A stretch of DNA of 64,000 nt from IMGVR_UViG_3300035661_000001:387957-451956, one strand, 5' to 3'. Counted from the stretch's first letter, positions 6,690 through 22,659 are shown. Notes: generated from the sequence alone by a model not told the origin. Program-made: numbers and translations.

Positions 6690-7382
6690 ATGAAATCTTT
6701 TGCCTTTACCGATAACTTAGATCAATTGCTCGAAGGGGTTATACACAGCCTAACCGGCAACCAGCCCTCTTTGGACCCCAATGAATCTTATAAATTGCTG
6801 GAAGAGTCGCCCGGTGCTAGTACCAGTTCGTTCGGCAGCCAAGTTTTATCAAATGCTCAGGCGGATCTTGGGGTGCATGAGGATTTAGGCAAAAATGATG
6901 GTAAGAGAATTCGTGAATATTTCAAATATTTTAATATGGGCGGGGGACAAGATTGGTGCGCAGCCGCGGTATCGGCTTGGATGAAAGAAGCTGGTGGCGG
7001 ACCAATACAAGGAGCAGTTGGCGCAAGAAATATAGCCGGACAATTTGACCAGGCTGGTAAGTGGATTCCCAAAAACAAAATTACTCCACAGGTAATGATC
7101 CCAGGGAACATCGTCGTGTGGAGTAGAGGTGGACCTGACTCTTGGAAAGGTCATATTGGAGTTTTAGAATCTTTTGATGGTCGCGGAGGATTCACTTCTA
7201 TTGAAGCTAATTCTGGACCTAAATCAGATTCAGTAGTGAGGAATAGTCATTCTATTAGTGATGGTAATTTATTGGGAATAGGTATCTTATCAGGATATAC
7301 TCCTACCTCCAAAATTGCAGCCGTCATTAGAATTGAAAATCTTACAAATATATATTACCAAAATGCTTTAAGATTCAAATAA
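6690..7382 (+). CDS. CHAP-domain peptidoglycan hydrolase
   Basis: WCAAAVS (catalytic Cys), PGNIVVW, GHIGV (His), IEAN. Confidence 0.85.
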   Translation: MKSFAFTDNLDQLLEGVIHSLTGNQPSLDPNESYKLLEESPGASTSSFGSQVLSNAQADLGVHEDLGKNDGKRIREYFKYFNMGGGQDWCAAAVSAWMKEAGGGPIQGAVGARNIAGQFDQAGKWIPKNKITPQVMIPGNIVVWSRGGPDSWKGHIGVLESFDGRGGFTSIEANSGPKSDSVVRNSHSISDGNLLGIGILSGYTPTSKIAAVIRIENLTNIYYQNALRFK

Positions 7383-7801
7383 CGATCCAACAGTTTTTGT
7401 AATTTTTTGTTTTGGTAATTTGTATAAAGAGATTCTTTCGGTAACCAGGCACCGACCTCTAGCATATCCTCATTTGATATAACACTAATATCTCTTGTAC
7501 AAATGATAACATTGAATTTTTTCAAAGCTTCAAATTCAATGTTATCATTTTCAATGGCAAAATTAATCATTGGTTCTACATTAAATCCAAACCATTTTTC
7601 AAAATCTTTTTTATATATTTGAACTCCGGGAAGAGTAACTTTATCAGTTGATAAAGCTGCTCTCTTGTATGATTTATTATTTGAATCCCATACACATCCA
7701 GTATTTAATATAGGGTGCTTATCATCATAAACAGAAAAGATTTTTTTATTCTTGATGTAGAACGTAAAACCATGTTTTACATTTATTTGAAATACTTTCA
7801 T
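7355..7801 (-). CDS. hypothetical protein with C-terminal KAFW tag
   Basis: 148 aa ORF ending LNLKAFW. Confidence 0.7.
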   Translation of the reverse strand: MKVFQINVKHGFTFYIKNKKIFSVYDDKHPILNTGCVWDSNNKSYKRAALSTDKVTLPGVQIYKKDFEKWFGFNVEPMINFAIENDNIEFEALKKFNVIICTRDISVISNEDMLEVGAWLPKESLYTNYQNKKLQKLLDRYLNLKAFW

Positions 7802-7804
7802 TAT

Positions 7805-8452
7805 TCAGATAATTTTATCTTTAGTCCAACCAAATGCATTTAAAGATAAATCAAACTGTCCAGTTTCAGATACTGATTTTAACATCTTCTGAGCAATTTG
7901 ACAAATTTCTAGTTGAGCATGAGCGGGATCATTTCTTAAACCTTGAAAGTGCATAAAAGATCTAAAATTAAACATAACGTCAGAAGTTATTTGATTTGCA
8001 TATGGAAGATAAAATCTGGCACTTTCCTTGGCTCTTTTTTTATCCATACCATTTTCCACCAAACGTTTTAAACATTCATGGTATTTTTGTACAGATGTCT
8101 CACAGTGATCAATTAATAATTTCTGCTCCTCTGTGATCCAATCTTCTGGAATATAATATTTATCATCTTTAAGCTCTTTATAACGAGCTGATTCTGCATT
8201 TATAGATACGCCAACTCTGTGTTTTAATAAATGTACATGAGCGCTCATTTCTGTAGTTACTAGGAAATGTAAACTAGATTTTTCAAATGGAGTATGATGA
8301 CCAGCAGTAGCTAATGAATTTAATAATTTATTCATTCGACTTCTTTTATCTTCAGTTAGGTCTCTACTTGTAGATGTCCATGCAGATAGAGCATGTGTTT
8401 CATCAGAGCCGTAAATTCCAACAAGTTCTATTTTATTCGCGTGTTCTTCCAT
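7805..8452 (-). CDS. thyX: FAD-dependent thymidylate synthase
   Basis: GHHTPFE, KHR...SINAESARY, ESARFYLP and HAQLEI motifs. Confidence 0.92.
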   Translation of the reverse strand: MEEHANKIELVGIYGSDETHALSAWTSTSRDLTEDKRSRMNKLLNSLATAGHHTPFEKSSLHFLVTTEMSAHVHLLKHRVGVSINAESARYKELKDDKYYIPEDWITEEQKLLIDHCETSVQKYHECLKRLVENGMDKKRAKESARFYLPYANQITSDVMFNFRSFMHFQGLRNDPAHAQLEICQIAQKMLKSVSETGQFDLSLNAFGWTKDKII

Positions 8453-8475
8453 TATAATTCCTTATTTTTCAATTA

Positions 8476-9507
8476 TTACACAATTACATCATGTGCATGA
8501 GATTCTCTCAGTCCTGCGCCCGTCATTCTCAAGAATTGCGGATTTGATTTTAAATCATTCAGATTATCTACGCCTTGATATGAACAACCAGATTTAATAC
8601 CATCAATAATCTTAGTTAAAATCAAATTAAAACTCTCTTTAGCTGGGACTATTGAGACTACTCCCTCTATATGAGAGGTTTTATGGGTAGAGCTGCCTGC
8701 GTATTCTTTAAATCTTTTTCCGTTAATGCTTTTAATTTCTCCAGGTGTCTCTTCGCAGCCAGCAAAAATATTGCCTATCATCATCAAATTAGCAAAACAT
8801 AATCCTTTGACACAATCTCCAGCAGATTTTGCCCCACCGTCTGAAATTAATAATAAATCACGAGTAACACCTTCGTCAAGCAATCTACGACGACCTTTAT
8901 CAGCCTCTACTATAGAAGTAAATTGTGGTACACCATTGCCGGTTTCAATCCTAGTAAGACAAATACTACCACCACCAATACCATTTTTAACTATGTCAGC
9001 TCCGGCTTTCCATAATTCATAAGATCCGATATCAGTAGCTGTATTACCAGCGATTAATAATATGTTAGGATAAGTTTTTGAAATCCATTCACACATTTCA
9101 ATACACATAGCCGAATGACCATGTGCCACATCAATGCACAATATTCTAGCCCCAAATGAAACTAATGTATCTATTATTTCAATATCTTCTTTTTTTACAC
9201 CAACAGAAAATCCAATATGATTCCAAACATTTGATCCAAATTCTTCTTCTAAAGATTTGACAATATTTATTTGATCTTCTAATGGCATGAATCTGTGGAC
9301 TATGCATAGTCCGCCAGACAAATAAATAGTTTTAGCCATATCAAAACCGATCAAAGATTTCATATTTGAAACTATAATCGGGTGTTTAAGAACTGTATCG
9401 AGTTTAGGTAACTTAACTGTTGTTTTTACTAAACTCCTCGATGGTATTTTACTGTATTTTGGCACAAGTAAAACATCATCAAAACATAAACCGTCATTTA
9501 TAATCAT
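8476..9507 (-). CDS. IMP dehydrogenase / GMP reductase family protein (no CBS domain)
   Basis: FDDVLLVP, IDVAHGHS, GIGGGSICLTR (catalytic Cys), SDGG, ESHAHDV. Confidence 0.9.
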   Translation of the reverse strand: MIINDGLCFDDVLLVPKYSKIPSRSLVKTTVKLPKLDTVLKHPIIVSNMKSLIGFDMAKTIYLSGGLCIVHRFMPLEDQINIVKSLEEEFGSNVWNHIGFSVGVKKEDIEIIDTLVSFGARILCIDVAHGHSAMCIEMCEWISKTYPNILLIAGNTATDIGSYELWKAGADIVKNGIGGGSICLTRIETGNGVPQFTSIVEADKGRRRLLDEGVTRDLLLISDGGAKSAGDCVKGLCFANLMMIGNIFAGCEETPGEIKSINGKRFKEYAGSSTHKTSHIEGVVSIVPAKESFNLILTKIIDGIKSGCSYQGVDNLNDLKSNPQFLRMTGAGLRESHAHDVIV

Positions 9508-9615
9508 TTATTTGCTCCATGCTGCTAAGCAGGCATACTTATATCCGCACTAGCTTAAAACTTTTACTTTTTCTGTCAACACGTTTAAAATATAAATAAT
9601 TATAAGTGGAGAAAT

Positions 9616-10335
9616 ATGGACGCCCAATCATGGTTAAATTCATTGCCTAATAATCCTGGACCAGCCCGTGATCAAGCTGTACTAGATGCTATTTCTGGAG
9701 GAATAGTTGTATGCAATTGGTCTCCAATAACTTCAACTATCGCTGGTCATACTGCTATTTTTCAAGTTTGTGAGGATGCAGCTTACATAGAGCTACCTGA
9801 TTCTTCTAGATTTAGATTTCAGGTTTCTGCCACTCTTGCCCAAAAATGTGCAGATTTATTATCTGCCTCTTTCATCACATCAAAAATTAGTGATTTGGCT
9901 TATAAACAAGCACAAGTAGTTGTCGGTGTCTCTACATTATCTCCTGATCCAGACATGGTAACCACTGACAAATCTAAAAAATGGAATACAGCGGTTGAAA
10001 ATAAACGTGCCAGTAGAACTGGATTATTTAGAGATTGTGGAAAGGCATGGATATTGAGCAATAGATTATCTACCCCTGTCAGTGCTGTCAATTATGGATT
10101 TTATGATAAATCTGCACCATATGTTAGCCAAGGCGGATTAAAAATGTGGCAAACAGTTGGTACAAGACATGATAGATCTCATACAGATTATTCACAAACT
10201 CTTATATTAATGAGTAGTTCCTGTGAAGTCGATGGTCAATCTGTTAATGTAATTGATGTAATGAAAGATCCTAAGCTATCTTCTCTATTAAGTTATGAGG
10301 GAGTTTTACGTTTCACGCGCCAACCCGGAGTATAA
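9616..10335 (+). CDS. uncharacterised protein, paralog of downstream gene
   Basis: PGPARD/AQKCAD/H.DYSQ pattern shared with 10339..11247. Confidence 0.7.
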   Translation: MDAQSWLNSLPNNPGPARDQAVLDAISGGIVVCNWSPITSTIAGHTAIFQVCEDAAYIELPDSSRFRFQVSATLAQKCADLLSASFITSKISDLAYKQAQVVVGVSTLSPDPDMVTTDKSKKWNTAVENKRASRTGLFRDCGKAWILSNRLSTPVSAVNYGFYDKSAPYVSQGGLKMWQTVGTRHDRSHTDYSQTLILMSSSCEVDGQSVNVIDVMKDPKLSSLLSYEGVLRFTRQPGV

Positions 10336-10338
10336 CAA

Positions 10339-11247
10339 ATGTCTTTTAAGGATGAATTTCTAAAAACACCTCCTGGACCTGCCAGAGAAGCATTAGTTTA
10401 TAATGCTATTATCCAACAAGGTCCTCCAAAAAATTTAGTACCTGTTACTGTTCCTGGTCCTGGTGGAACTAAAATAACCTATCAAACTATGGCTGATTAT
10501 ATTACCATTGATGGAATTCGTGTGCCTATGACTCCAGTCACAGCTCAACGTGTAGCTAATCATTTTGGCATGATGTTGCCAACATCTAAAATGTCACAAC
10601 AAATATATGAAGCTGCAAAAACTAAAGTACGAGCTAATCCTCTTTCTGGCACAGGATATGTAAGTCCATTAACAGGTAAGAGATATTCTGGCAAAGATGT
10701 TGTAAAATCCAGAATTGGAGAATCTGATGCGGCGGTTGCTTACAGTAATTTAACAAATCAAGAGTTATCTAAAATTAAAAATCCTGGTTTAATCAGCGGT
10801 CATGGTAAAGAGATCACTGAACCAACGCAAAGTGCTAGCATTAGTGATGTTAGTTTCGGTGGTTGGCAAGGTGCTGGCGGAAAAGCATTACAGCCATATA
10901 CAAATGCTCATAAGGGACAAGCCGCATTTCATACAGAGTATGCATTAAATACACGTTTGATCGATGATGGCAATGTTATTATAACTACACCTGATGGTAA
11001 AACCATTTCAACAACAATGCAAAAATTAAGAGCTAATCCTAATTTTAGTAAAGCTATTGCAGATGCAACAGGCATCAAAAAATATGATGATAAATCACAA
11101 AAAGTATCTCCTACAAAAACAATTGAGCCGGCACCAGGTAAGGTACCAGCTCAAATTGCCGTTTCTCCACAAACAAAATCTGATCCAGGTAGAGTAGCTT
11201 TATTGCAAATAATAGACGATCTATTAAGTCAATTCACTAAAGGATAA
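10339..11247 (+). CDS. uncharacterised protein, paralog of upstream gene
   Basis: PGPARE/AQRVAN/H.EYA pattern. Confidence 0.7.
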   Translation: MSFKDEFLKTPPGPAREALVYNAIIQQGPPKNLVPVTVPGPGGTKITYQTMADYITIDGIRVPMTPVTAQRVANHFGMMLPTSKMSQQIYEAAKTKVRANPLSGTGYVSPLTGKRYSGKDVVKSRIGESDAAVAYSNLTNQELSKIKNPGLISGHGKEITEPTQSASISDVSFGGWQGAGGKALQPYTNAHKGQAAFHTEYALNTRLIDDGNVIITTPDGKTISTTMQKLRANPNFSKAIADATGIKKYDDKSQKVSPTKTIEPAPGKVPAQIAVSPQTKSDPGRVALLQIIDDLLSQFTKG

Positions 11248-11249
11248 AT

Positions 11250-11495
11250 CTACCAAAAAGCCTTCATATTTATTCTTCTAATCATTTCATCTTCACTAAA
11301 ATATATTTTAGTGAAGATGAAAGTAAAAAAAACATCAGGAATAGAATTATTATCACCAGTATAAAAGAACACTCTGATTTTTGGATACTTAAAATCATAA
11401 ACAGTAATAACTCCCGCCTTATGAGTTTTATAATTATCTGATGATAAGTCTACTAGAAATTCTTTAATTTTTGGGTGTAGATCATCTAGATTCAT
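11250..11495 (-). CDS. hypothetical protein with C-terminal KAFW tag
   Basis: 81 aa, ends INMKAFW. Confidence 0.65.
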   Translation of the reverse strand: MNLDDLHPKIKEFLVDLSSDNYKTHKAGVITVYDFKYPKIRVFFYTGDNNSIPDVFFTFIFTKIYFSEDEMIRRINMKAFW

Positions 11496-11707
11496 TTATG
11501 CCTATAGGTGATTCTTCCACGTGACATATCGTATTCACTAACTTCACAGGTTACTTTATCACCTACTAAAATCTTTACGGAATTTACTCTAATTTTTCCG
11601 CTTAGAGTGCAAAGTACAATGACGGAGTCATTAACTTTTACTTTGAAATTGCCTTTGTTAGCATCTACAACAAAACCTTCAAACTCTAATCTATCTCTAT
11701 TCGCCAT
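11492..11707 (-). CDS. infA: translation initiation factor IF-1
   Basis: 71 aa; EGFV...FKV...LSGKIR...ILVGDKV..EVSEYD..RGRITYR. Confidence 0.93.
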   Translation of the reverse strand: MANRDRLEFEGFVVDANKGNFKVKVNDSVIVLCTLSGKIRVNSVKILVGDKVTCEVSEYDMSRGRITYRHK

Positions 11708-11723
11708 CCTATATATAATCCTT

Positions 11724-12371
11724 TTATGTTAAAAACGAAAAATCTATATCGTATAATTTATTTAACGTGTCCACTAAGTCTTTAGATGGACCCATACAAG
11801 TTATCCACTCATTCGTCTCAGCGCAAGGTAAGACACAATTTTCTTTATTTTTGAATTGTAAAAAATATTTGATGTCCAAATTTTTCGCAATACGCCTCAA
11901 ACGTTTTAAACCTATTGTTAATGGAGATACTTTTTCCCACGCATTATCATATAACATATATGATCTTAAATAATTGTCTAAACCCAACAATGTTAATACA
12001 ATACAGTATTCAGAAGTATCTTCCACTTTACCAATTATTAAATAGCATAATTTACTTATCTTAATAAATTTATTTAAAGACAGACCGGCATACAAATCGG
12101 TTTGTATTAAATTTTTACGACACAATTTTAAATCGTTATATGTTATATTTAATCTTTTGTTTTTAACAATATTTAATGAGTTACCAAATTCATCAAACCA
12201 ATGTTTGTATAACTGTAAACTGTATTTATCATTGTTGTAGAATATATTGTAAGGTTTTAATCTACATGATCTAATGATAAATGAGAGTTCCTCAATCTCT
12301 GTAAAAGAAGCTGCTAACAAGATTGCTTTGTTAATTTGAAAATAAAATCTATCTAAACTAGGGCTTTTCAT
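11724..12371 (-). CDS. hypothetical protein
   Basis: 215 aa ORF in - strand operon. Confidence 0.7.
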   Translation of the reverse strand: MKSPSLDRFYFQINKAILLAASFTEIEELSFIIRSCRLKPYNIFYNNDKYSLQLYKHWFDEFGNSLNIVKNKRLNITYNDLKLCRKNLIQTDLYAGLSLNKFIKISKLCYLIIGKVEDTSEYCIVLTLLGLDNYLRSYMLYDNAWEKVSPLTIGLKRLRRIAKNLDIKYFLQFKNKENCVLPCAETNEWITCMGPSKDLVDTLNKLYDIDFSFLT

Positions 12372-13021
12372 TCTTCTAAGATGGACATATCTATATCATC
12401 ATAATATTCAGAGCTAATTGCTGGACCTACTTCATGAACAACTGTTTTGATGAACGGTAAATAATTAATCCCTTTTTCTTCTGCTAATTTTCTATGTAAC
12501 AGATAACAGTTTCTACTATCAACTTTAGCATTATGTGCATCTGCTAATTTTTTAATTCCTACTAGATCACAGGAAGACTGAAGATCAAAACGTTGTTTTT
12601 CAGATTTAACTATTCCTATTTTTTTTGCATACTCTTTGGTTAATGGAATGGTGTCTAACCACAAATTAGCAGGAAATGCCTGGCTTTCACTTTTCCATAA
12701 AGCATGTAGAAACCTACGATCGAAAGGTGAATTATGAGCAACGATTACACGATGAGCTGGTGTTCCACCATCTTCCGCGAAAAATCTATTACATTCTGCT
12801 ACAACATCAGATTTATTATGACCACGGTCTAAGTCTGCCATAGTTTTTTTAGTAATTCTTAAAGCATCAAAACTCGCTCGTTCAGGATGTTCACATTTTA
12901 TACATCTGTGAAGCTGTACTCGATCTACAGCTCTTATAATACCGATTTCGGTCATTTCATGATACCCACAGCTTAACCCGGTAGTCTCAGTATCAATAAC
13001 GTAATAAAACAGTCCGCTCAT
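12368..13021 (-). CDS. DEDDh 3'-5' exonuclease (second copy)
   Basis: IDTETTGL, AHNSPFD, LDT, HNAKVD. Confidence 0.9.
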   Translation of the reverse strand: MSGLFYYVIDTETTGLSCGYHEMTEIGIIRAVDRVQLHRCIKCEHPERASFDALRITKKTMADLDRGHNKSDVVAECNRFFAEDGGTPAHRVIVAHNSPFDRRFLHALWKSESQAFPANLWLDTIPLTKEYAKKIGIVKSEKQRFDLQSSCDLVGIKKLADAHNAKVDSRNCYLLHRKLAEEKGINYLPFIKTVVHEVGPAISSEYYDDIDMSILEE

Positions 13022-13024
13022 TAT

Positions 13025-13321
13025 TCACCAAAACGCTTTCATATTTAAAGATTTTTCTATTTTATTTACTATTATTTTCATTTCATCGACGTGTTTAATA
13101 ATAGAAAGTTTCGCTTCTAGTTCATCAACTTTAGACAAATCATCTTTATGATCTGATAACTCAGATTTTAATTCCTCTGAAGCAGAAATCATTTCATTAT
13201 AATCTCCAGCCATTTCTTTCATTTTTTCAGGATTACTGTAGATATTAACTTCCATGTAACGACGAAATTGTCTAACTGTCTTCTCTATTTTCGCATAAGT
13301 ATTTGGCTTATCTTTTTTCAT
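13025..13321 (-). CDS. hypothetical protein with C-terminal KAFW tag
   Basis: 98 aa helical/charged, ends LNMKAFW. Confidence 0.65.
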   Translation of the reverse strand: MKKDKPNTYAKIEKTVRQFRRYMEVNIYSNPEKMKEMAGDYNEMISASEELKSELSDHKDDLSKVDELEAKLSIIKHVDEMKIIVNKIEKSLNMKAFW

Positions 13322-13800
13322 CGAAAAATACTTTCCCGCATAAATAAAGGTAACATTCCTTTATTTTTCATTTCTTCTTGTACTGTAGGAGATAAATAGT
13401 GAAAACCACTAATTAACTTCCTGCATTTTACAGAACCACAGTTACATCTCATTTGCCAAATATCTACTGTGTCCGTAGAGCTAGTTGAATAATCAAATGT
13501 TAATTCAGAATCAGGAGCAATATCATACAAAGAATATAATATCGCCCTATTACCAGCAATAGATAAATAACAATTAGGATCACAACTATGATTTACATAA
13601 TCATCTTTACCACCAGATGGTCCTATAAAAATATCAGGACCTACTTGTAATGTGGTTGAACTATCTGGTAAATTACCACTGTTAAAAAAATCACCAGTCA
13701 TCTCAATGATAGGTATATTTTTTTTAATCTTAACAGATGTAAAAACGCCCTGACCACCTAGTCGGCTAGGCTTTAATTTAAGATAATCTTTAGAAATCAT
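13318..13800 (-). CDS. SET-domain methyltransferase with post-SET Cys motif
   Basis: GQGVF, NHSCDPN, ELTFDY, CNCGSVKCR. Confidence 0.9.
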   Translation of the reverse strand: MISKDYLKLKPSRLGGQGVFTSVKIKKNIPIIEMTGDFFNSGNLPDSSTTLQVGPDIFIGPSGGKDDYVNHSCDPNCYLSIAGNRAILYSLYDIAPDSELTFDYSTSSTDTVDIWQMRCNCGSVKCRKLISGFHYLSPTVQEEMKNKGMLPLFMRESIFR

Positions 13801-13801
13801 A

Positions 13802-14044
13802 TTAACCTAATAAATTCTTCATAAATCTAATCATGGTACTACCAGCCTCATAAACTATTAATTTTAATTCTCTTCTGCCTACTAATCTATGTTTCACGGA
13901 CACTGGACTTTGATTTTTAATCAATCCAGCCGCTTGATGAGCATCCTCTGCTAATATTCGATATGTCAATGTTGCTGGTAACATACATTCGACTTTTACA
14001 TCATAATAGTATTTTGGTTTTGGTAATTGTTGTTTTTCAGCCAT
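13802..14044 (-). CDS. hypothetical protein
   Basis: 80 aa ORF in operon. Confidence 0.65.
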   Translation of the reverse strand: MAEKQQLPKPKYYYDVKVECMLPATLTYRILAEDAHQAAGLIKNQSPVSVKHRLVGRRELKLIVYEAGSTMIRFMKNLLG

Positions 14045-14056
14045 AATATGTCTATA

Positions 14057-14782
14057 TCATTTCCCAACTAATTCATAAAATCTATTCAAAAATAATACTT
14101 CAGCTTCTGCCGGACCTAATGGTTCTATCTTTAAAGGTATGGGCTTAATATTAGTTATCCAATCTTCTCTTAATGGTGACATTAAATCACGAGCTTCAGT
14201 AGCCAACATTAATCCATCTGCAATTTTAACTGATGGTGGTTCTGCCATAGGAAGATTAAACCTTTTACAGATAGCTTCTTGCATTATCTTTTCAAATTCA
14301 ATGTAGGCTCCGAATTTACCTGACCTTTTAAGAGGGCTAGGAACATCTATTAAATAAGCTTCTGTAGCATCATGAAGCAAACCCCATAATCTATCAGAAC
14401 TGTCACACAGGTAAGATACTAGCACGCTGTGCTGAGCTACACTATAGAATCTTTTTACATGTCCGCTAAACCGACACTGCATAGATAGCGCATGAGCTAT
14501 ATCCTGAATTACAATGGATTCATAATTAGGATTGGTTGGAGTAAATCTTACTCCGCTAAAAGTTTGAATCCAAGCCTCTTCTGGATTAAACTCTTCTGAA
14601 CCAATATCATATCTAACCGCATATCCATTATCTGGATCTTTACTTAAATCCCTTGGAGGAATAGGCTCAGATTTTAATTGAGGATAATCAGTAAATAATT
14701 TATTAATTGCAATTTCATCTTCTTCAGTACAAATTGGAGGAAGAGTATTGCTTAAATATTCGGCATCTAATGGGTTTTTCAT
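14057..14782 (-). CDS. HD-domain 5'-deoxynucleotidase (YfbR/YfdR-like)
   Basis: DIAHALS..CRF.GH...YSVAQHS, LLHDATEAY..D.PSP; start placed at the ATG just after dut. Confidence 0.85.
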   Translation of the reverse strand: MKNPLDAEYLSNTLPPICTEEDEIAINKLFTDYPQLKSEPIPPRDLSKDPDNGYAVRYDIGSEEFNPEEAWIQTFSGVRFTPTNPNYESIVIQDIAHALSMQCRFSGHVKRFYSVAQHSVLVSYLCDSSDRLWGLLHDATEAYLIDVPSPLKRSGKFGAYIEFEKIMQEAICKRFNLPMAEPPSVKIADGLMLATEARDLMSPLREDWITNIKPIPLKIEPLGPAEAEVLFLNRFYELVGK

Positions 14783-14783
14783 A

Positions 14784-15233
14784 TTATTGACCTGTGCTAC
14801 CAAATCCACCAGCACCTCTATCGGAAACTGATAGATCTTCAACTATTTCAAACTCTATTTTGACTACTGGACAAAGAACAATCTGTGCAATCCTATCTCC
14901 AACTTCAATATTAAAATCATCTTTTCCAGAATTCATTAAGATTACACCTAATTCTCCACGATAATCACTGTCAATAGTGCCAGGACTATTCAAAACAGTA
15001 ATGCCTTGTTTAAGAGCTAAACCTGATCGCGGTCTTACTTGTATTTCATAATCTACAGGTATTTCAAATGAAAGACCCGTTGGAACAAGTGCCCGATCAC
15101 CTGAATGAATTACTAAACTTTTTGTAGAAGTAATATCCATCCCCGCCGCACCCTTAGTTTGATATTGGGGTTGTTTGGATAGAACAGAATTCAATTTTAA
15201 TTTTACTGGTTTAATCGTTGAGAAAGTTGTCAT
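14784..15233 (-). CDS. dut: dUTP diphosphatase
   Basis: AAGMD, RSGLA, GTIDSDYRGE, RIAQ, RGAGGFGSTG. Confidence 0.95.
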   Translation of the reverse strand: MTTFSTIKPVKLKLNSVLSKQPQYQTKGAAGMDITSTKSLVIHSGDRALVPTGLSFEIPVDYEIQVRPRSGLALKQGITVLNSPGTIDSDYRGELGVILMNSGKDDFNIEVGDRIAQIVLCPVVKIEFEIVEDLSVSDRGAGGFGSTGQ

Positions 15234-16488: not shown

Positions 16489-17001
16489 TCAGATAAAAGC
16501 AGTTAATTTCCGGATGCCCTGTAGCCAACGAACAATATCTAATACTGTGTCTATAGGTATTTTTTTACCAGTCTGAAATCCATTCCAGTGAATCACCCAT
16601 TGACATTTAGAAAATCTATAATCTTTTATAGGATCTATTTTATTAAGCAATACCGCAGGGTTTCCTAAAGCAGTTTTATATTTTTCTTCATACAAAGTTA
16701 AATCCAACACTAAATCTTTCATTTGATTATCCGTGTATTCAGATTTAATTATCTTTGCCACAAATTGACCAACTCTGATTCCTCCAGACTTAACAATAAA
16801 ATCTTTCATTTTGTTCTTTTTAACATTTGTTAAATCACAGAATCCTCCGGCTTCTTTTAGTTTCATTTTTTGTTTGATTTCAGATTCCGCCGGAATCCAA
16901 CTACCAGAAAAACTATCTGGTAAACTTTCTTCCTCTTGGGTATATTGTTGATTAACAAGCCTTTGTATTAATTCAAAATATTCTTGGTTAGTCATTTTCA
17001 T
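16489..17001 (-). CDS. hypothetical protein, C-terminal LTAFI
   Basis: 170 aa ORF. Confidence 0.7.
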   Translation of the reverse strand: MKMTNQEYFELIQRLVNQQYTQEEESLPDSFSGSWIPAESEIKQKMKLKEAGGFCDLTNVKKNKMKDFIVKSGGIRVGQFVAKIIKSEYTDNQMKDLVLDLTLYEEKYKTALGNPAVLLNKIDPIKDYRFSKCQWVIHWNGFQTGKKIPIDTVLDIVRWLQGIRKLTAFI

Positions 17002-17042
17002 AATTAATTATATAACAATTTATAATAAATTCACATCATTCT

Positions 17043-17690
17043 ATGAATATCAATAGAGTAGTTAAATTAATCGACGTTTTTTATTCTCTAGCTTCTGAGA
17101 AGTTGCCGCCTGATTCTTCTAATTTAAAAACTATATTAAAGAATATAGAAAACCTTGAAACTTATCAGGCACGTATTAAATACGCAGAAGATAATTTAGA
17201 CCATCTGTCCTCTGGATCATCTCGTATTGTTTATCAAGCACCAGATAAAACTATTATTAAATTAGCCAAGAATGATAAAGGTATAGCTCAAAATAAAGCT
17301 GAAGCCAATCCTAAAATGAAATCTGATTTCCTAAACGAAATTATTTCTAAAGATCAAAAAGGATATTGGATACAAACATATTTTTTGGATAAAATAAATG
17401 AAAAAGAATTCGAAAACTTAACTAAAATTTCTTTTGAAGATTTTAGTGAGGCATTGTCATTCGGAACTGATAAAAGTTCCAGCAAACAGCCTAAGAATTT
17501 TGATAAAGTATCAAAAACTCCTGTTTATAAAGAAATGAAAAGGCTTTGTGAGGATTTTGATCTGGTATCAGGAGATGTGACTAGGATTTCTTCCTGGGGA
17601 ACTAAAGGTAATAAACCTATATTAATCGATGCAGGATTAACAGGAAAGATCTTCGAAGAATTTTACGAAGATGAAGATTCTTCCTCATAA
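17043..17690 (+). CDS. protein-kinase-like fold protein
   Basis: SGSSRIVY (Gly loop), IIKLA, QNKAE, GD...SWG, ILIDAG. Confidence 0.55.
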   Translation: MNINRVVKLIDVFYSLASEKLPPDSSNLKTILKNIENLETYQARIKYAEDNLDHLSSGSSRIVYQAPDKTIIKLAKNDKGIAQNKAEANPKMKSDFLNEIISKDQKGYWIQTYFLDKINEKEFENLTKISFEDFSEALSFGTDKSSSKQPKNFDKVSKTPVYKEMKRLCEDFDLVSGDVTRISSWGTKGNKPILIDAGLTGKIFEEFYEDEDSSS

Positions 17691-17710
17691 TAATTTTAAA
17701 TATCGATCCA

Positions 17711-18382
17711 TTGACATGCCGATTCCATGTGTTATCTTTAGGTGAAGATTTTTATAAGATCCACCTAAAGATTATGATTTTTAAAACTATTAAGGATTTA
17801 ATTGAACATAAATCAAATTGCACAATTTGCAATTCACCATTGCACGCTTTTCTCAAAGAAAAAGCTAGGAATAAAGAAAGTATTCCCCAAAAAAGAATAT
17901 GTTTAATTAATTCTAAATTCAAAAACCAACAATTTGAATTTAAATTAGATTATTGTAGACATAATCTGGATATCCATTATCAAGCCATTCTTAATGATTC
18001 TAATCTATTAATTCTGGACCCACCTATTTTAGAAGAAAATGAAGTGGAATATGCTTTATCATTCCTAACAGATCTGTTTCTTAATATTGAATTACACTGT
18101 CTCAATAAAGAATGTAAACATAATTTTTATACCTTTACCTCAATATTAAAACCAAAATATAATTCAGATATTGGAGTATTTTTTCTTCCATTCTTTTTAG
18201 ATTGGGAATGTTTTAACTTGAAACATTTATGGATTCAAAATGATAACGTATCCCAATTAACAAAAATTTATAATACTAACTCTATTACAACACTTCCAAT
18301 TACTATGCCTTTATTGCAAATAAGTTCCGATAACAAAGAAAAGATATTCAACAGAATTAAAACTATTGTAAATTTTAGATAA
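17711..18382 (+). CDS. CxxC / C-terminal-tag paralog family member
   Basis: CTIC near N-terminus (true start likely MIFKT), ends RIKTIVNFR. Confidence 0.7.
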   Translation: MTCRFHVLSLGEDFYKIHLKIMIFKTIKDLIEHKSNCTICNSPLHAFLKEKARNKESIPQKRICLINSKFKNQQFEFKLDYCRHNLDIHYQAILNDSNLLILDPPILEENEVEYALSFLTDLFLNIELHCLNKECKHNFYTFTSILKPKYNSDIGVFFLPFFLDWECFNLKHLWIQNDNVSQLTKIYNTNSITTLPITMPLLQISSDNKEKIFNRIKTIVNFR

Positions 18383-18386
18383 TAAT

Positions 18387-19085
18387 ATGTTAAAAGAATT
18401 TTTAAATTTTAATACTCATTGCCCATCTTGTAAAAACCCCCTTACTTTATTCATGAGATGGTCCGGAGATATCATTGATAATGATTATCGTTTATTCAGG
18501 TTTCATCACAAACCAAATGAAAATATCGCATTTCGAGAAATTAAACAAGATAATAAATATCCACAAAACTCTAAACACTCATTAGGTATAAACGGAATTA
18601 TTTATCCAAATACTAATTCAATCACTTTCAATACTACCTCTGCAGAAAAGATAATTCAAAACCAAGATTCTATCTATTTCTTTTTTATATGTAATCCCAG
18701 CTCCATTGAATATCTTTCTAATGATTATGAAATCAATGTTTACGATTCTTGTTATTTTAGATCATCTTTTCCAGTAAAATTTGTAAAAAATGATAATCGT
18801 CTATGTCCGACATATATAGAACCACCAGGTAATCATATAGCTAATGAGCATTTTACTATCCTAGATAAAAAAGAAAATTCAGAAAAAGTATATGTTTTAA
18901 CTGTATCTCATGAAGATAACAAAACATATTTAATGTATTACTCAGTTGACAACGAACAGACTTCAGACGAAGCTTTTACACCAAAAGTTTTTACCAAAGA
19001 ACTTCCATTACTGAAAACTAGCCCTGACCCATCCGACAAAGACAAGTTACTGGAACGAATGAATTCCTGGATAATCATGAGTTGA
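18387..19085 (+). CDS. CxxC / C-terminal-tag paralog family member
   Basis: CPSC, ends RMNSWIIMS. Confidence 0.7.
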   Translation: MLKEFLNFNTHCPSCKNPLTLFMRWSGDIIDNDYRLFRFHHKPNENIAFREIKQDNKYPQNSKHSLGINGIIYPNTNSITFNTTSAEKIIQNQDSIYFFFICNPSSIEYLSNDYEINVYDSCYFRSSFPVKFVKNDNRLCPTYIEPPGNHIANEHFTILDKKENSEKVYVLTVSHEDNKTYLMYYSVDNEQTSDEAFTPKVFTKELPLLKTSPDPSDKDKLLERMNSWIIMS

Positions 19086-19237
19086 TTATACGCATTAGGC
19101 GCCGAAGTTGCAGACTTTTCTTTCTTAGGTAATGGCGTCAGAAACTATGTAGAAGCTGTTTGGATTCATTTTAGAGAAGAATTAGACAGAAGAAAAATAG
19201 ATACAGAATTTTTCTGTGATCTAGAAATATAAATTTT

Positions 19238-20326
19238 ATGAATATCCCGCAAATAATCGCCTCAAGCGATGATAAACTTTCATCGCTTTTTAATATGATT
19301 CCTATTCATATTCATGAAAATAGGGTAAAAGAAATAGATCATCAGGTCAGTTCCCCGGAACTCTGGAGAAATCCACAAAAAGCCGCCGTTCTTATGAAAG
19401 AAAGACAAAAACTTTCAGAACTAATATCTTTCTTATCAACCGCCAAATCTAAATTGGAATTCTATAAAGAATGTTTATCTTCCATTCCAGATGAATTAAT
19501 AGGAATAGAAGACCAAATAATGAGTTTATACTCCGCTATCTCCAACTTGGAGTTTAAACAAATGTTATCCGATCCACTCGACGATTCTCCAGCAATAATT
19601 TCTATCAACGCTGGCGCTGGAGGATTAGAAGCCGCTAATTGGACTACCATGCTTTTTAGAATGTATTCCAGATATGCCGCCGCTAATGACTTAAAAATAG
19701 AACTCCTTGACATGAAACCCTCAGAAGAACACTCTTCTATCTGTACAGACTCCGTCTCTATTCGTATCGAAGGTCCCTATGCTTATGGCTTTCTTAAATC
19801 AGAAATAGGCGTTCATCGATTAATTCGTAACTCTCCATTTAACGCTAATGATGCCAGACATACCTCATTCGCCGCCGTGACTGTTCTCCCAGATATAGAA
19901 GATCAAATAGATATTCAAATAAATGAAAAGGATATCGAAATTACTACAATGCGATCCTCTGGCGCTGGTGGACAAAATGTTAATAAAGTAGAGTCAGCTG
20001 TTAGATTAAAACATATTCCAACCGGTCTAGTTATCAATTCTAGATCAGAACGAGACCAACATACCAATAGAAAAATTGCTCTCAAAATTTTAAAAGCTAA
20101 ACTTTATGAATTAGAAGTGAATAAGAAAAATGCCGAAAAAGAGAAGTTCTTCAACTCTATGCAGGATAACTCCTTCGGACATCAAATAAGGTCATATATT
20201 CTATTCCCATCCCAAATGGTAAAAGATCATCGCTCCGAATATGAAACTAAATCTGCTACACAAGTTCTAGATGGCGATTTAACTCCATTTATTAACGCTT
20301 TTCTACATTCAAATGTTAACCGTTAA
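19238..20326 (+). CDS. prfB: peptide chain release factor 2
   Basis: [18 protein letters not shown] (RF2-specific SPF), GAGGQNVNK (GGQ), QIRSY; single uninterrupted frame. Confidence 0.92.
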
Positions 20327-20882
20327 AGATTTCATTGGATACAACAATCCATGCTTCTTCTGCAAAACACCAATAGATCTGAAGATTAGATCTACTAATG
20401 CATCAAATGATCGATCTATCTCTATCAAACCGGACCTATCATCGGAAATATTAGATCTTGCTTTAAAAGTTACCTATGTGGGCACTCTTAATTTAAAAAT
20501 AAATCACACCCACAACAGATTTAATTCAAATAATTTTAAAGACTTGACAGCATATTTAAAAGATTATAAGCTCTCTATGAGCCTTCGCTGCAATAAATGT
20601 GGCACTACCATAAAAAGCAAAAATTTACAATTTGATCTAGTTAACCAAATTATCAAACCACTAGAAATATCTAGCGAAGTTCTCAACGTTATAGGTAAAG
20701 GTACTTTTTATTCTTTAGTCTCCAATTTCCAAAAGAATATATCTATCCTGTCCGCAACTCCTATGCAACTAGGTAAAAATAATTATACCACTATACTAGA
20801 TCTCCCACTGCAACCACTATCAAAATTCGATAGTCCAGAACATTTCATAAAGAAAATGAAAACCCTTCTTCTATTTATATGA
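20313..20882 (+). CDS. CxxC / C-terminal-tag paralog family member
   Basis: CFFC...CNKC, ends KMKTLLLFI. Confidence 0.7.
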
Positions 20883-21220
20883 TATACGAAAATTGCCCAA
20901 TCTGTTCAAAAACATTATCAAAACAATCAGAAACTTTAAACCCAGGTTTAATAAGCTGCGAGTCATTCTGCGAAAAAGAAAAAGACCACTCCTTCTTCTC
21001 AAGATGGTTTAATGAAGAACCCAATCAAACGCAAATAATTAAAATTGCTTTCAAAGGTGACTCCAAAATATTTTTGAAACTCAATTACCAATTACAAAAA
21101 AGTTTTATCTGGACAAAACCAAATGACGTACATCCCATTAAAGTATCATTGTTTGAACCAGATTTCTCTGATATCCCAAAACTTAAAAAGAAACTCAAAA
21201 CCCTTCTTCTATTCATATAA
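20879..21220 (+). CDS. CxxC / C-terminal-tag paralog family member
   Basis: CPIC, ends KLKTLLLFI. Confidence 0.7.
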   Translation: MIYENCPICSKTLSKQSETLNPGLISCESFCEKEKDHSFFSRWFNEEPNQTQIIKIAFKGDSKIFLKLNYQLQKSFIWTKPNDVHPIKVSLFEPDFSDIPKLKKKLKTLLLFI

Positions 21221-21222
21221 AT

Positions 21223-21576
21223 ATGAAAATCCCATCCGATTGCCCTATCTGTCATCAATTCCTGTTAAATAAATACATACAAGATGCCAACCAAATCGAT
21301 GTCCTAAAGAAGAAATGCTTCCGCTCTCCCACCCATAATATAGAATATACCTCCCTCCCAAATCAGGACGATTCCCTTAAATCTATCACTCTCACCACCT
21401 TCAATAAACTAGAAATCTCCCATTTCAAATGGGACTTCCAATTAAAAGAATTCACAATCCGTTTCCCCAAAGGAAACTTTACCCAAGAGATAAAACATCT
21501 CCCATTCTTTATTCCCAATTTATCTAATCTCCCAACCCTAATATCAAAAATTAAGAAATACTTAATTTTCTCATGA
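21223..21576 (+). CDS. CxxC / C-terminal-tag paralog family member
   Basis: CPIC, ends KIKKYLIFS. Confidence 0.7.
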   Translation: MKIPSDCPICHQFLLNKYIQDANQIDVLKKKCFRSPTHNIEYTSLPNQDDSLKSITLTTFNKLEISHFKWDFQLKEFTIRFPKGNFTQEIKHLPFFIPNLSNLPTLISKIKKYLIFS

Positions 21577-21589
21577 CATATGATAATGC

Positions 21590-21919
21590 ATGAAGCTACC
21601 CAAATTTTGCCCAATCTGTAATAATAGATTAAAAAAAGATGTCAACCCACAAATAAACTCTAGCAAAATCTGCTGCGCTAAATCCCCAGGACACTATCTC
21701 GGATACCTATTTGACGAAAAATCTCAGCTCACTCACGTCTTCCTTACCCTAGACAATTACTCAAGCATCGAACTACGAACAATCCATAACGAAACAATCT
21801 TCTATTATAACCCCAAATCTAACCTGGATTTTCTCGTCATACCCAAACTCCTAATTCCCGATTTCCCATCCCTCAGTAAACTAAAACAAAAACTATCCAT
21901 CCTAAGGGTGTTTATCTAA
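21590..21919 (+). CDS. CxxC / C-terminal-tag paralog family member
   Basis: CPIC, ends KLSILRVFI. Confidence 0.7.
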   Translation: MKLPKFCPICNNRLKKDVNPQINSSKICCAKSPGHYLGYLFDEKSQLTHVFLTLDNYSSIELRTIHNETIFYYNPKSNLDFLVIPKLLIPDFPSLSKLKQKLSILRVFI

Positions 21920-21942
21920 CCCACCCATCAAGAGGTCTACCC

Positions 21943-22308
21943 TTGAATTGCCCCTCCCTAAATTGCCCGTTCTGTAACAATCCACTGCAATTTAAACTCG
22001 ATAATTATAAATTTGTAAGACAAAACTACTCCCAACCATATTCCTGTACAAAATGTCCAGGAAAACCTACCTTCGCCCTACTCTTCCAACAAGATAAAAT
22101 CCCCCAAGCTATTGATATCTTCCTGCCCGCCAAATATAAAAAACAACGCTATTATATTCACCAAAATTATATAGCCAAATCTACCACCATCTTAAAAAAT
22201 AACTACCCCAAATCTATCATCATAACCTCTCTCCCTATCCTAGATATCTCCCCTAATACATCCCAACATACCCTATATAGAATTCTAAGCAACAAAGCCT
22301 TCCTATGA
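21943..22308 (+). CDS. CxxC / C-terminal-tag paralog family member
   Basis: CPFC...CTKC, ends ILSNKAFL. Confidence 0.65.
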   Translation: MNCPSLNCPFCNNPLQFKLDNYKFVRQNYSQPYSCTKCPGKPTFALLFQQDKIPQAIDIFLPAKYKKQRYYIHQNYIAKSTTILKNNYPKSIIITSLPILDISPNTSQHTLYRILSNKAFL

Positions 22309-22659
22309 CTCCAAATTGCATTTTTTTTGCTCTTCTATCCTAGAAATTACCGAATTATCAAAAAACTCTTCCGTTGCACATTGCCCCCAATGTATGAAAA
22401 TAGAAGAATATTATATTTCTTATTACCTAGAAACTAATAAAAAAATTGACACATGCATGGTTTATCACTCAGACAAAAGTATAAAATACTCTGTCGCCCT
22501 AGACCTAAAACTATACACTATCATCATCACTACCTGGGAAGCAAATGCCCTAGTCGATGCTATCTATTTCCCCTCCCACTATTCAATTCCCTATTCCACC
22601 TAATGGAAATCGCCGGACAATTTGCCCAGCGATTCAATAAAATTAAAGCTTTCCTTTAA
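22305..22659 (+). pseudogene. frameshifted CxxC / KAFL-tag family member
   Basis: ATG 22305 (MTPNC..) is broken by a T8 run at 22321-22328. The body is in the 22316..22603 frame; the C-terminus ...FNKIKAFL is in another frame after a C-rich run near 22570. Confidence 0.55.

What the first reader, a model, noticed from the sequence alone, without database searches (positions are those of the whole stretch)
7355..22659. Shared C-terminal tag on a dozen otherwise dissimilar proteins (…KAFW / …KAFL / …LLFI)
SEEN: C-termini RYLNLKAFW (7355), RRINMKAFW (11250), KSLNMKAFW (13025), IRKLTAFI (16489), RILSNKAFL (21943), RFNKIKAFL (22659 end), KMKTLLLFI (20313), KLKTLLLFI (20879), KIKKYLIFS (21223), KLSILRVFI (21590), RIKTIVNFR (17711) and RMNSWIIMS (18387). 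Each is a basic amphipathic stretch, with Phe at the penultimate position in all but the last. The three KAFW proteins differ in length and show no other obvious similarity. INFERENCE: a portable C-terminal address, such as a capsid-packaging or ejection signal, a docking peptide for a common hub, or a degron. Terminal aromatic motifs serve as protease or partner docking signals in other systems.
Basis: partly seen in the sequence, partly recalled or inferred. Interest (0 to 1): 0.65.

Follow-up and report, generated by a model that had tools for sequence, protein, structure and literature searches.

The report
Shared C-terminal handle on huge-phage proteins
Dozens of small, fast-evolving proteins of an uncultivated ~450-kb bacteriophage and its relatives end in the same short helix with phenylalanine as the second-to-last residue; this looks like a common docking handle, but its partner is still unknown.

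Summary
All 12 C-termini are in the sequence, although seven of the quoted coordinates are gene starts, not ends. A scoring matrix trained only on the window's proteins finds 13 more such C-termini elsewhere in the same 452-kb phage genome, against 0.08 expected. Related huge phages carry 36, 36 and about 70 copies. The core is Φ-x-x-[L/Y/M]-Φ-Φ-F-x-COOH, always with exactly one residue after Phe, and here preceded by Arg/Lys. Synonymous codons and stop codons vary, so selection acts on the protein. The tail is twice as conserved as the body (61% against 30% identity).

Eight genes at 17.7-22.7 kb belong to one large unannotated family: an N-terminal zinc ribbon, a β-meander and a terminal helix, with at least 1371 representatives. 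The three KAFW proteins resemble each other only in the tail. In a relative, the KAFW-type tail ends an expanded MORN-like repeat family.

My best reading is a docking handle that plugs many variable small proteins into one common partner. The closest precedent is the T4 capsid-targeting sequence (MKTYQEFIAE, against the consensus K-T-Y-L-x-F-S). The partner was not identified, and one co-folding test gave no answer.

The parts
7355..7801 (-). 148-aa protein with tail ...KLQKLLDRYLNLKAFW (class A, KAFW flavour)
   Evidence: ORF and translation. Homologues down to 35% identity keep ...YQNKKLQK..Y.N..AFW. AF2 was of low confidence (pLDDT 55) and gave a mixed alpha/beta model. No Pfam hit above cut-off.
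11250..11495 (-). 81-aa protein with tail ...EDEMIRRINMKAFW (class A)
   Evidence: The syntenic orthologue in L001 ends RRINMKIFW. No similarity to class B.
13025..13321 (-). 98-aa protein rich in helix-favouring residues, with tail ...KIEKSLNMKAFW (class A)
   Evidence: The family alignment A5 has K, F and W invariant at the end. It shares only the last 16 columns with the 148-aa family.
16489..17001 (-). 170-aa conserved core gene with tail ...WLQGIRKLTAFI, transcribed divergently from the kinase-like gene
   Evidence: Orthologues in G1, G3 and G5 end KKLTAFL, KKLSAFL and YKYPQFL. It is present beside the kinase-like gene in most of the contigs examined. Homologues carry no annotation.
17043..17690 (+). 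215-aa minimal kinase-like protein (context; a possible partner, untested)
   Evidence: Conserved next to the class-B genes in 14 viral contigs. The profile hits the SteC effector kinase weakly over the Gly-loop and Lys region, E = 0.048. No Pfam hit.
17711..18382 (+). Large class-B protein (223 aa from TTG, 202 aa from ATG at 17774): zinc ribbon CTIC and tail ...KIFNRIKTIVNFR
   Evidence: The G1 orthologue ends NRIKTIVNFG.
18387..19085 (+). 232-aa zinc-ribbon protein (CPSC) ending RMNSWIIMS; a relative of class B WITHOUT the Phe tail
   Evidence: PSSM score -2.2. Genes at the same position in relatives also lack penultimate Phe.
19238..20326 (+). Class-I peptide chain release factor, RF2-like (SPF and GGQ motifs), embedded in the class-B gene cluster (context)
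   Evidence: Translation. Bacterial relatives at 35-48% identity. A release-factor-sized GGQ gene holds the same position in 5 further contigs.
20313..20882 (+). 189-aa class-B protein with two CxxC and tail ...[15 protein letters not shown]
20879..21220 (+). 113-aa class-B protein with tail ...PKLKKKLKTLLLFI; this is the protein that was modelled
   Evidence: AF2 pLDDT 90.9: seven beta strands plus helix 99-112. No convincing PDB fold match. BFVD matches are only uncharacterised phage proteins.
21223..21576 (+). 117-aa class-B protein with tail ...LISKIKKYLIFS
21590..21919 (+). 109-aa class-B protein with tail ...LKQKLSILRVFI
21943..22308 (+). 121-aa zinc-ribbon protein (TTG start) with tail ...LYRILSNKAFL
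22316..22659 (+). Class-B gene split over two frames: zinc ribbon (CPQC) in 22316-22603, tail ...QRFNKIKAFL in 22453-22659
   Evidence: In the near-identical 349-kb contig, a neighbouring family match stops short of the tail (profile positions 4-99).

Best explanation
The tail is a 12-16-residue C-terminal amphipathic helix that serves as a shared docking handle. Its core is Φ(-8)-x-x-[L/Y/M](-5)-Φ-Φ-F(-2)-x-COOH. In this genome it is preceded by R/K(-9), and in the zinc-ribbon family it is opened by a [T/S]-P-x-N cap. The bodies in front of it are variable binder-like modules: a zinc ribbon with a beta-meander, MORN-like repeats, or small helical or alpha/beta domains. They diversify rapidly, while the handle, including its distance to the free carboxylate, is held constant. 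Many different small proteins can therefore be plugged into one common partner.

Shown: the motif, its position-specificity, protein-level selection, its presence on unrelated bodies, and its conservation across a clade of huge phages.

Inferred: that it binds an external partner at all. Of the specific partners considered, the prohead/scaffolding core comes first. That would make it a capsid-targeting peptide like the T4 CTS, loading a cocktail of variable proteins for co-injection. I put that sub-claim at about 0.2-0.25. The co-transcribed kinase-like protein and the phage's own ClpP pair are the next candidates.
For: (1) Out-of-sample enrichment: 13 C-termini observed against 0.08 expected. 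Tailed proteins number 26, 36 and 36 in G0, G1 and G3, and 74 of 302 ORFs in G005 have penultimate Phe.
(2) Exactly one residue follows Phe. In the 98 pooled tails F(-2) is 97/98. In the 150 best profile hits it is 144/150, and in nearly all of them the profile's last position is the protein's last residue.
(3) Both faces of the helix are conserved in class B: K(-9) 145/150, K(-7) 87, T(-6) 105, N(-13) 86 and P(-15) 91, as well as L/I(-8), Y/L(-5), L(-4) and F(-2). Solvent-facing residues this conserved on a body with 19% mean column identity point to an external constraint.
(4) The tail is 61% identical against 30% for the body in 31 inter-genome homologue pairs.
(5) The tail occurs on unrelated bodies: hhalign aligns tails only, there are 71 unlinked groups, MORN-like bodies carry either tail flavour or other ends, and 95 of the 96 tailed proteins scanned hit nothing in Pfam or PHROGs (the other hits only a zinc ribbon).
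(6) In G005 and in P0053 the end keeps F-x-COOH even with a Pro just before it (YKYPQFL, KLHPFW). The terminal F-x-COOH therefore matters more than helicity.
[quoted passage not shown] The CTS is MKTYQEFIAE (PMC8442874), which is K-T-Y-x-x-F-Φ in the same spacing as the class-B consensus K-T-Y-L-x-F-S.
(8) All tailed genes lie in the AT-rich body and none in the GC-rich terminal part: 26/429 against 0/206, p = 5e-5.
Against: No partner was identified. The single co-fold (major capsid protein + kinase-like protein + class-B protein) scored 0.00, which is 'no answer'.

In the confident AF2 model of a class-B protein the helix has pLDDT about 90. That fits a helix packed on its own beta sheet, and the tool gives no coordinates to check this.

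Class B, and in G005 class A, are true paralogue families. Much of the 'sharing' is therefore common descent rather than a portable tag.

Against the capsid sub-claim specifically: the T4 CTS is N-terminal and is cleaved off; no protease site is conserved before the tail; about 70 cargo genes in one genome is far more than in any known phage; the tailed proteins are not basic like the T4 internal proteins; and their expression timing is unknown.
Confidence: 0.5

Rival explanations
1. The tail is a purely structural element. It would be the capping helix that covers one face of a single-layer beta sheet in one very old, very divergent superfamily (zinc-ribbon/beta-meander and MORN-like repeats). 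It looks like a tag only because the rest has diverged beyond recognition, and there is no external partner.
For: AF2 gives the helix high confidence in class B. Structural neighbours are single-layer sheets and sheet-plus-helix proteins such as OspA, the TCP domain, p32 and TipC, plus a MORN-repeat protein in BFVD. Class B and the G005 class A are true families. The polar face changes charge between lineages.
Against: The same tail sits on bodies that are probably not beta sheets: the 98-aa E/K/L-rich protein, the 165-177-aa family at G0 197-198 kb, and the 148-aa alpha/beta model. Solvent-face residues K(-9), K(-7) and T(-6) are conserved at 58-97%. The tail is more conserved than any core position of the body. 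The strict 'one residue after Phe' rule and the Pro-containing variants are not expected of a packing helix.
Confidence: 0.25
2. The tail is a C-terminal degron or protease-tethering peptide. It would deliver the small proteins, or host proteins bound by their variable bodies, to a Clp-type protease. This would be analogous to ssrA/MuA-type C-terminal ClpX signals or to the SspB C-terminal tethering tail.
For: The phage encodes two tandem bona fide ClpP genes (about 155 bits each) and a full DnaJ. Recognition of a free C-terminal carboxylate would explain the fixed distance from Phe to the end. Non-polar C-termini are classical bacterial degradation signals (general knowledge, not tested here).
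Against: No ClpX, ClpA or ClpC was found in the phage, only MoxR-like AAA proteins. The last residue is variable (S, L, W, I), unlike known ClpX C-motifs. Nothing links the tails to ClpP by position or co-occurrence.
Confidence: 0.1
3. The tail is a membrane-targeting amphipathic helix like the C-terminal helices of MinD or FtsA.
For: In this window the tails are basic and amphipathic and sit at the extreme C-terminus.
Against: In G005 the same tails are acidic or neutral (SNDEINAFVESLLIFS, SQEEFEEQIKLAMFW). Near-invariant Phe at one exact position and a fixed end are not needed for lipid binding.
Confidence: 0.05
4. The tail is a sliding-clamp-binding motif (beta-clamp QL[SD]LF type, or PIP/T4 gp45 type).
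For: [T/K/N]-[L/M/Y]-x-[A/L/V]-F resembles Q-L-x-L-F, and clamp motifs often sit at C-termini (recalled from memory, so only a lead).
Against: No DnaN, gp45-type clamp or clamp loader was detected in the phage. None of the phage replication proteins carries the tail. The tail is a capped helix, whereas clamp motifs bind in extended form. About 30-70 clamp ligands of unknown function per genome is implausible.
Confidence: 0.03
5. The resemblance is chance or a DNA-level signal (terminator, promoter, ribosome-binding site or recombination site) that overlaps gene ends.
For: AAAGCTTT is palindromic, and many tailed genes overlap the next start (ATGA).
Against: Synonymous codons and all three stop codons are used. 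The downstream contexts differ. The statistics exclude chance.
Confidence: 0.01

Closest known systems
T4 capsid-targeting sequence (CTS, MKTYQEFIAE) of the T-even internal proteins IPI/IPII/IPIII
   Same: A ~10-residue terminal peptide is the only thing shared by small, highly diverse phage proteins that vary between relatives (PMC3012670). The K-T-Y-x-x-F-Φ spacing is identical to the class-B consensus K-T-Y-L-x-F-S.
   Different: The CTS is N-terminal and is removed by the prohead protease. T4 has a handful of such proteins, against 26-70 here. Packaging of the present proteins is untested. The phages are not close relatives (terminase no more than 25% identical to any cultured phage).
Encapsulin cargo-loading peptides and microcompartment encapsulation peptides
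   Same: Short terminal peptides (C-terminal in encapsulins, amphipathic helices in microcompartments) address unrelated cargo proteins to the inside of a protein shell. Encapsulin shells have the HK97 fold typical of tailed-phage capsid proteins.
   Different: There is no sequence resemblance (encapsulin peptides are Gly/Ser/Leu-rich and extended). No shell binding has been shown here.
Families with a variable binder and a constant docking module (poxvirus ankyrin/PRANC F-box proteins; AKAP amphipathic helices that dock protein kinase A)
   Same: Expanded, fast-evolving viral paralogue families whose only constant part is a short C-terminal docking element. AKAPs share just an amphipathic helix that docks a kinase, and here a kinase-like gene is co-located with the arrays.
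   Different: Those are eukaryotic systems with no homology to these proteins. The docking partner here is unknown.
HbYX motif (hydrophobic-Tyr-X-COOH) of proteasome activators
   Same: The same logic at the extreme C-terminus: hydrophobic residue, aromatic residue, any residue, free carboxylate.
   Different: The aromatic residue is Phe, not Tyr. No proteasome or HslV homologue is found in the phage. The bearers are small non-ATPase proteins.
MORN / MORN-variant repeat proteins (including YwqK-type immunity proteins)
   Same: The class-A bodies in G005 are tandem W-x-x-G-K-x-H-R-x-D-G-P-A repeats. A MORN-repeat protein is a weak structural neighbour of class B.
   Different: Pfam's MORN models do not hit them; only a weak DUF6745 match is found. 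Known MORN proteins are not reported to end in this tail.

Membership tests
T4-type capsid targeting sequence | Short terminal peptide that is the only element shared by otherwise unrelated small phage proteins | tested here: met
   literature statement.
T4-type capsid targeting sequence | Located at the N-terminus and removed by the prohead protease at an [L/I]-x-E site | tested here: not met
   The tail is at the extreme C-terminus, and no conserved cleavage motif precedes it.
T4-type capsid targeting sequence | Sequence K-T-Y-Q-E-F-I | tested here: inconclusive
   The class-B consensus K-T-Y-L-x-F-S has the same spacing. The class-A tails (N-[LM]-K-A-F-W) do not match. The comparison was made after the fact.
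T4-type capsid targeting sequence | Bearers are incorporated into proheads and virions | not testable with these tools
   No cultured member of the clade. The co-fold with the major capsid protein gave no answer.
Bacterial beta-clamp-binding motif (QL[SD]LF) | Q-L-[S/D]-L-F-like pentapeptide in an extended, flexible segment of replication or repair proteins | tested here: not met
   Only the L-x-Φ-F part fits. The tail is a capped helix. It is carried only by proteins of 61-232 aa of unknown function, and none of the phage's larger proteins, its replication proteins among them, ends in it.
Bacterial beta-clamp-binding motif (QL[SD]LF) | A clamp is available as partner | tested here: inconclusive
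   No phage DnaN, gp45 or clamp loader. A host clamp cannot be excluded.
MinD/FtsA-type membrane-targeting helix | Basic amphipathic C-terminal helix, with composition rather than exact sequence conserved | tested here: not met
   The tails are acidic or neutral in G005. Phe is near-invariant at position -2.
HbYX proteasome-docking motif | Hydrophobic-Tyr-X at the free C-terminus of a ring ATPase or activator, with a 20S/HslV partner | tested here: not met
   The pattern Φ-F-x-COOH fits formally, but no proteasome family member is present and the bearers are not ATPases.
ClpX C-terminal recognition signals (ssrA-like LAA, MuA-like RRKKAI) | Defined last 2-3 residues with a free carboxylate, and a ClpXP partner | tested here: inconclusive
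   The last residue is variable. Two ClpP genes are present but no ClpX-like unfoldase.
Any curated protein family (Pfam, PHROGs) | Significant profile match | tested here: not met
   Of 96 tailed proteins, one hit a zinc-ribbon model and none hit PHROGs. The G005 class A gave only weak DUF6745 matches.

The most novel reading that the evidence does not exclude
A clade of huge (350-480 kb) phages uses a C-terminal 'address code', the helix ending in F-x-COOH, to load tens of rapidly diversifying binder proteins (zinc-ribbon/beta-meander and MORN-like) into one machine. That machine would be either the prohead, so that a large cocktail of anti-defence proteins is injected with the DNA, or a phage-encoded enzyme such as the co-transcribed minimal kinase or the ClpP pair, which the variable bodies would then aim at different host targets.
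Probability: 0.2. Interest if true: 0.8.

Novelty: new variant of a known kind. Interest (0 to 1): 0.6.

Why it matters
If the tail is a docking or loading signal, it gives a one-line sequence rule (…L-x-x-F-x-stop). That rule picks out a functional class of "dark" genes, up to about a quarter of the genes in one relative, in a widespread clade of uncultivated huge phages. It also gives a handle for finding their common partner by peptide pull-down or systematic co-folding. It would extend the T4 internal-protein principle (a constant address with a variable anti-host payload) to a far larger scale and to the C-terminus. Such a tail might also serve as a portable tag for loading foreign proteins. 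Independently of function, the work defines a large unannotated family (at least 1371 representatives at 50% identity), a conserved module of kinase-like gene, RF2 and zinc-ribbon array, and a phage genome with two sharply different base compositions.

Tried and rejected
1. Co-fold of the major capsid protein (L017:15873-16883) + kinase-like protein + the class-B protein at 20879-21217: score 0.00, 'no answer'. This is not evidence either way.

2. Searches for clamp and proteasome partners in the phage (TIGR00663, PF02768, PF02916, PF13177, PF00227) found nothing. The AAA_2 search found only MoxR-like ATPases, not ClpX.

3. A fold search of the class-B model against the PDB gave no convincing match: Foldseek E >= 0.05, VIA best Z 7.1 (LolB), and generic beta meanders otherwise. 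The ESM Atlas gave only leads (Imm44, TipC, TumE). BFVD returned only uncharacterised family members.

4. AF2 of the 148-aa KAFW protein with 4 sequences gave pLDDT 55, too poor to compare folds.

5. A k-mer search for shared promoter motifs upstream of tailed and structural genes found nothing usable. Expression timing therefore remains unknown.

6. Net charge and pI of tailed and untailed small proteins do not differ.

7. Literature searches for the motif, for MORN expansions in phages and for jumbo-phage C-terminal motifs found nothing relevant.

9. The idea that the window is an assembly chimera, raised by its 32%/60% GC jump, was rejected. The GC-rich part is colinear with relatives and the record is bounded by a 254-bp terminal repeat.

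10. TAG recoding was considered because of a tRNA(CUA) plus RF2. It is not shown, so no alternative code was used.

Full report
WHAT THE WINDOW IS. The window is the last 64 kb of a 451,956-bp IMG/VR virus record. IMG/VR classes it as having direct terminal repeats, and CheckV rates it 100% complete. I found an exact 254-bp repeat at its ends. The record encodes a large terminase, a portal, a head-maturation protease domain and a major head protein. It also encodes DnaB- and UvsW-type helicases, ribonucleotide reductase, two ClpP genes, a full DnaJ and 41 tRNAs. No cultured phage is close: the terminase is at most 25% identical to any. Relatives of 350-480 kb exist in IMG/VR. I fetched G001 (terminase 82% identical) and G003 (71%) whole, together with the 239-kb fragment G005 (63%). 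The finding's region (window 7.3-22.7 kb) lies in the AT-rich body of the genome (about 32% GC), just before a jump to about 60% GC at 24 kb.

THE OBSERVATION. All twelve peptides are the C-termini of ORFs. One peptide (RMNSWIIMS) does not fit the motif. One (RFNKIKAFL, 22453-22659) is the out-of-frame end of a split zinc-ribbon gene that begins at 22316.

A 12-column matrix trained only on the ten window proteins was applied to the 625 other ORFs of the genome. It scored 13 C-termini at >=10, where internal windows and shuffled tails each predict 0.08. About 26 proteins of the genome carry the tail. All are 68-202 aa long and all lie in the AT-rich body: 26/429 ORFs there against 0/206 in the GC-rich part, p = 5e-5. 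Penultimate Phe occurs in 37 of 282 small ORFs (p = 2e-9), while neighbouring positions hold 9-17.

The signal is in the protein, not the DNA. The three KAFW ends use different Lys and Ala codons and three different stop codons. In four genomes the codons at F(-2) and L(-5) follow genome-wide usage.

ANATOMY OF THE TAIL. G001 and G003 each have 36 tailed proteins. The pooled logo of 98 tails is R/K(-9) 96%, L/I/V(-8), K(-7), T/K/N(-6), L/Y/M(-5), L/K/I(-4), A/L/V/T(-3), F(-2) 99% and S/L/W/I(-1). There are two flavours.

Class A ends ...R-x-[LI]-N-[LM]-K-A-F-[WL] and sits on diverse bodies. Class B ends ...[T/S]-P-x-N-Φ-x-x-K-[LI]-K-T-[YLM]-L-x-F-S. It follows an N-terminal CxxC...C zinc ribbon and a beta-rich middle, in tandem arrays.

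In G005, 74 of 302 ORFs (25%) have penultimate Phe. About 45 are class-B paralogues ending ...SN[DE]EIN.[FL]I..L[LI]IFS. About 25 are class-A paralogues made of MORN-like W-x-x-G-K-x-H-R-x-D-G-P-A repeats ending C-x-S-Q-E-E-F-E-x-x-I-K-L-A-M-F-W. In that genome the tails are acidic or neutral. The invariant part across the clade is therefore Φ(-8)...L(-5)...Φ(-3)-F(-2)-x-COOH. Variants with a Pro just before Phe (YKYPQFL, KLHPFW) still keep F-x-COOH.

ARE THE BEARERS HOMOLOGUES? Partly. Class B is one family. Thirty members align with three invariant Cys and the tail. A profile of them finds 1371 representatives (at 50% clustering) among 1.84 billion proteins. In the best 150, Phe is penultimate in 144 and K(-9) occurs in 145, and the profile's last position is the protein's last residue in nearly all.

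By contrast, the three KAFW families of the window resemble each other only in the tail. hhalign of the 148-aa and 98-aa families aligns the last 16 columns and nothing else, and none of them matches class B. After the last 14 residues are removed, 98 tailed proteins fall into 71 BLAST-unlinked groups. The MORN-like family has 591 hits. Half of its best 120 end in ...CSSQ.EFEKLLKLKAFW, a few end in the class-B flavour (...ELIFS), and the rest have unrelated C-termini. This shows that the tail is a separable module. Apart from one zinc-ribbon match, none of 96 tailed proteins hits Pfam or PHROGs.

CONSERVATION PATTERN. In 31 homologue pairs between genomes the last 12 residues are 61% identical and the bodies 30%. 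Orthologues of the 148-aa protein at 35% identity keep ...TNYQNKKLQK..Y.N..AFW.

An AF2 model of the class-B protein at 20879-21217 is confident (pLDDT 90.9). It shows seven strands followed by helix 99-112. It has no convincing solved relative. The nearest things are single-layer sheets and sheet-plus-helix binders or immunity proteins, plus a MORN-repeat protein, all at lead level only.

HOW IT MOST LIKELY WORKS. Four features point to an external, common partner rather than a mere packing helix.
- Both faces of the helix are conserved, including solvent-type residues K(-9), K(-7), T(-6) and N(-13).
- The tail is better conserved than any part of the bodies.
- It occurs on unrelated bodies.
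- The distance from Phe to the free carboxylate is fixed.

I therefore read it as a docking handle that plugs many variable small proteins into one partner (confidence about 0.5).

The closest precedent is the T4 capsid-targeting sequence. [quoted passage not shown] That sequence, MKTYQEFIAE (PMC8442874), has the same K-T-Y-x-x-F-Φ spacing as the class-B consensus. This resemblance is a lead, not a test. The T4 peptide is N-terminal and is cleaved off, and packaging could not be examined here. I put the capsid-loading sub-claim at 0.2-0.25.

Two other candidate partners come from the genome itself. The first is a 215-aa minimal kinase-like protein (window 17043-17690; weak match to the SteC kinase Gly-loop/Lys region). 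It is co-located with the class-B genes in 14 contigs, together with a 170-aa F-tailed gene on the opposite strand and an RF2-like release factor. The second is the tandem ClpP pair.

RIVALS.
- A purely structural capping helix of one ancient superfamily (0.25) is supported by the confident helix in the model and the sheet-type bodies. It is weakened by the non-sheet bearers, the conserved polar face and the strict end.
- A degron or protease-tethering tail (0.1) fits the ClpP genes and the role of the carboxylate. It lacks an unfoldase and has a variable last residue.
- A membrane-targeting helix (0.05) is contradicted by the acidic tails of G005.
- A clamp-binding motif (0.03) lacks a clamp, is absent from the replication proteins, and the tail is helical.
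- Chance or a DNA signal is excluded.

NOVELTY AND VERDICT. The motif and both families are unannotated. I found no paper that describes them. The principle, a constant terminal peptide on variable phage proteins, is known from T4. The C-terminal position, the F-x-COOH rule, the scale (26-70 genes per genome) and the bearers are new. I rate it a new variant of a known kind, with interest 0.6. The function remains inferred.

Noticed in passing
window 24000-50000 (57-63% GC) against window 1-23500 (~32% GC); whole genome G0 1-75 kb 44% GC, 76-411 kb 32%, 411-440 kb 57%: One phage genome bounded by terminal repeats has two sharply different base compositions. The GC-rich part holds small ORFs that are colinear and conserved at protein level with relatives G001 and G003, which IMG/VR labels 'provirus', probably for this reason. 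The ten ORFs of window 25.9-54 kb that I scanned have no Pfam hits, and no tailed gene lies in the GC-rich part. The RF2 gene's best bacterial matches are contigs of Polyangiaceae/Byssovorax MAGs. A possible reading is that the GC-rich ends are early genes with host-like codons, while the AT-rich body is served by the phage's own 41 tRNAs, tRNA-synthetase-like genes (by eye), IF1 and RF2.
   Followed up: partly
window 58115-63989 (tRNA-Lys UUU x3, Leu CAA x2, Tyr, Arg UCU x2); G0 80119 (tRNA with anticodon CUA): The window's tRNA array reads A/U-rich codons. Elsewhere the genome has an amber-suppressor-like tRNA(CUA) together with an RF2-like release factor (window 19238-20326), the combination reported for TAG-recoded phages. 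However, TAG ends only 17 of 429 ORFs in the AT-rich body and the extensions after it are mostly short. Recoding is not shown, and no other genetic code was used.
   Followed up: partly
window 16489-22659 and loci L207-L220: A conserved gene module occurs in most of the 14 huge-phage contigs found with the kinase-like gene: a ~170-aa F-tailed gene (minus strand), a 215-aa minimal kinase-like protein, two 200-235-aa zinc-ribbon proteins, an RF2-like release factor, and then an array of 8-14 class-B genes of ~110 aa. Five of the ten contigs scanned show the release-factor gene. Why a release factor sits inside this array is unexplained.
   Followed up: partly
window 22316-22659: A class-B gene is split between two reading frames: the zinc ribbon is in 22316-22603 and the tail in 22453-22659. 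This could be a pseudogene, an assembly indel or a frameshift; it was not resolved.
   Followed up: no
G0 217515-218653 and 258240-259256 (outside the window): The phage encodes two tandem ClpP proteases (about 155 bits each to Pfam CLP_protease) and a full DnaJ (J domain, zinc-finger domain and C-terminal domain). No Clp unfoldase was found.
   Followed up: partly
window 7805-15233: The class-A genes are interleaved with metabolic and translation genes. In the syntenic locus L001 their orthologues carry the Pfam families ThyX (Thy1), IMPDH/GMP-reductase, IF-1 (eIF-1a), RNase_T exonuclease, SET domain and a CHAP peptidase. The 3' end of the CHAP gene (6690-7382) overlaps the KAFW gene's end by 28 bases on the opposite strand.
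   Followed up: no
window 22656-23381 (minus strand): A trypsin-like serine peptidase (Trypsin_2, E = 1.5e-15) with a hydrophobic N-terminus lies exactly at the AT-rich/GC-rich boundary. It explains the extreme negative GC skew of 22-24 kb.
   Followed up: no
window 540-1289 and elsewhere in G0: There are many homing-endonuclease-type genes: a GIY-YIG/NUMOD3 gene in the window, and HNH and LAGLIDADG hits elsewhere in the genome.
   Followed up: no
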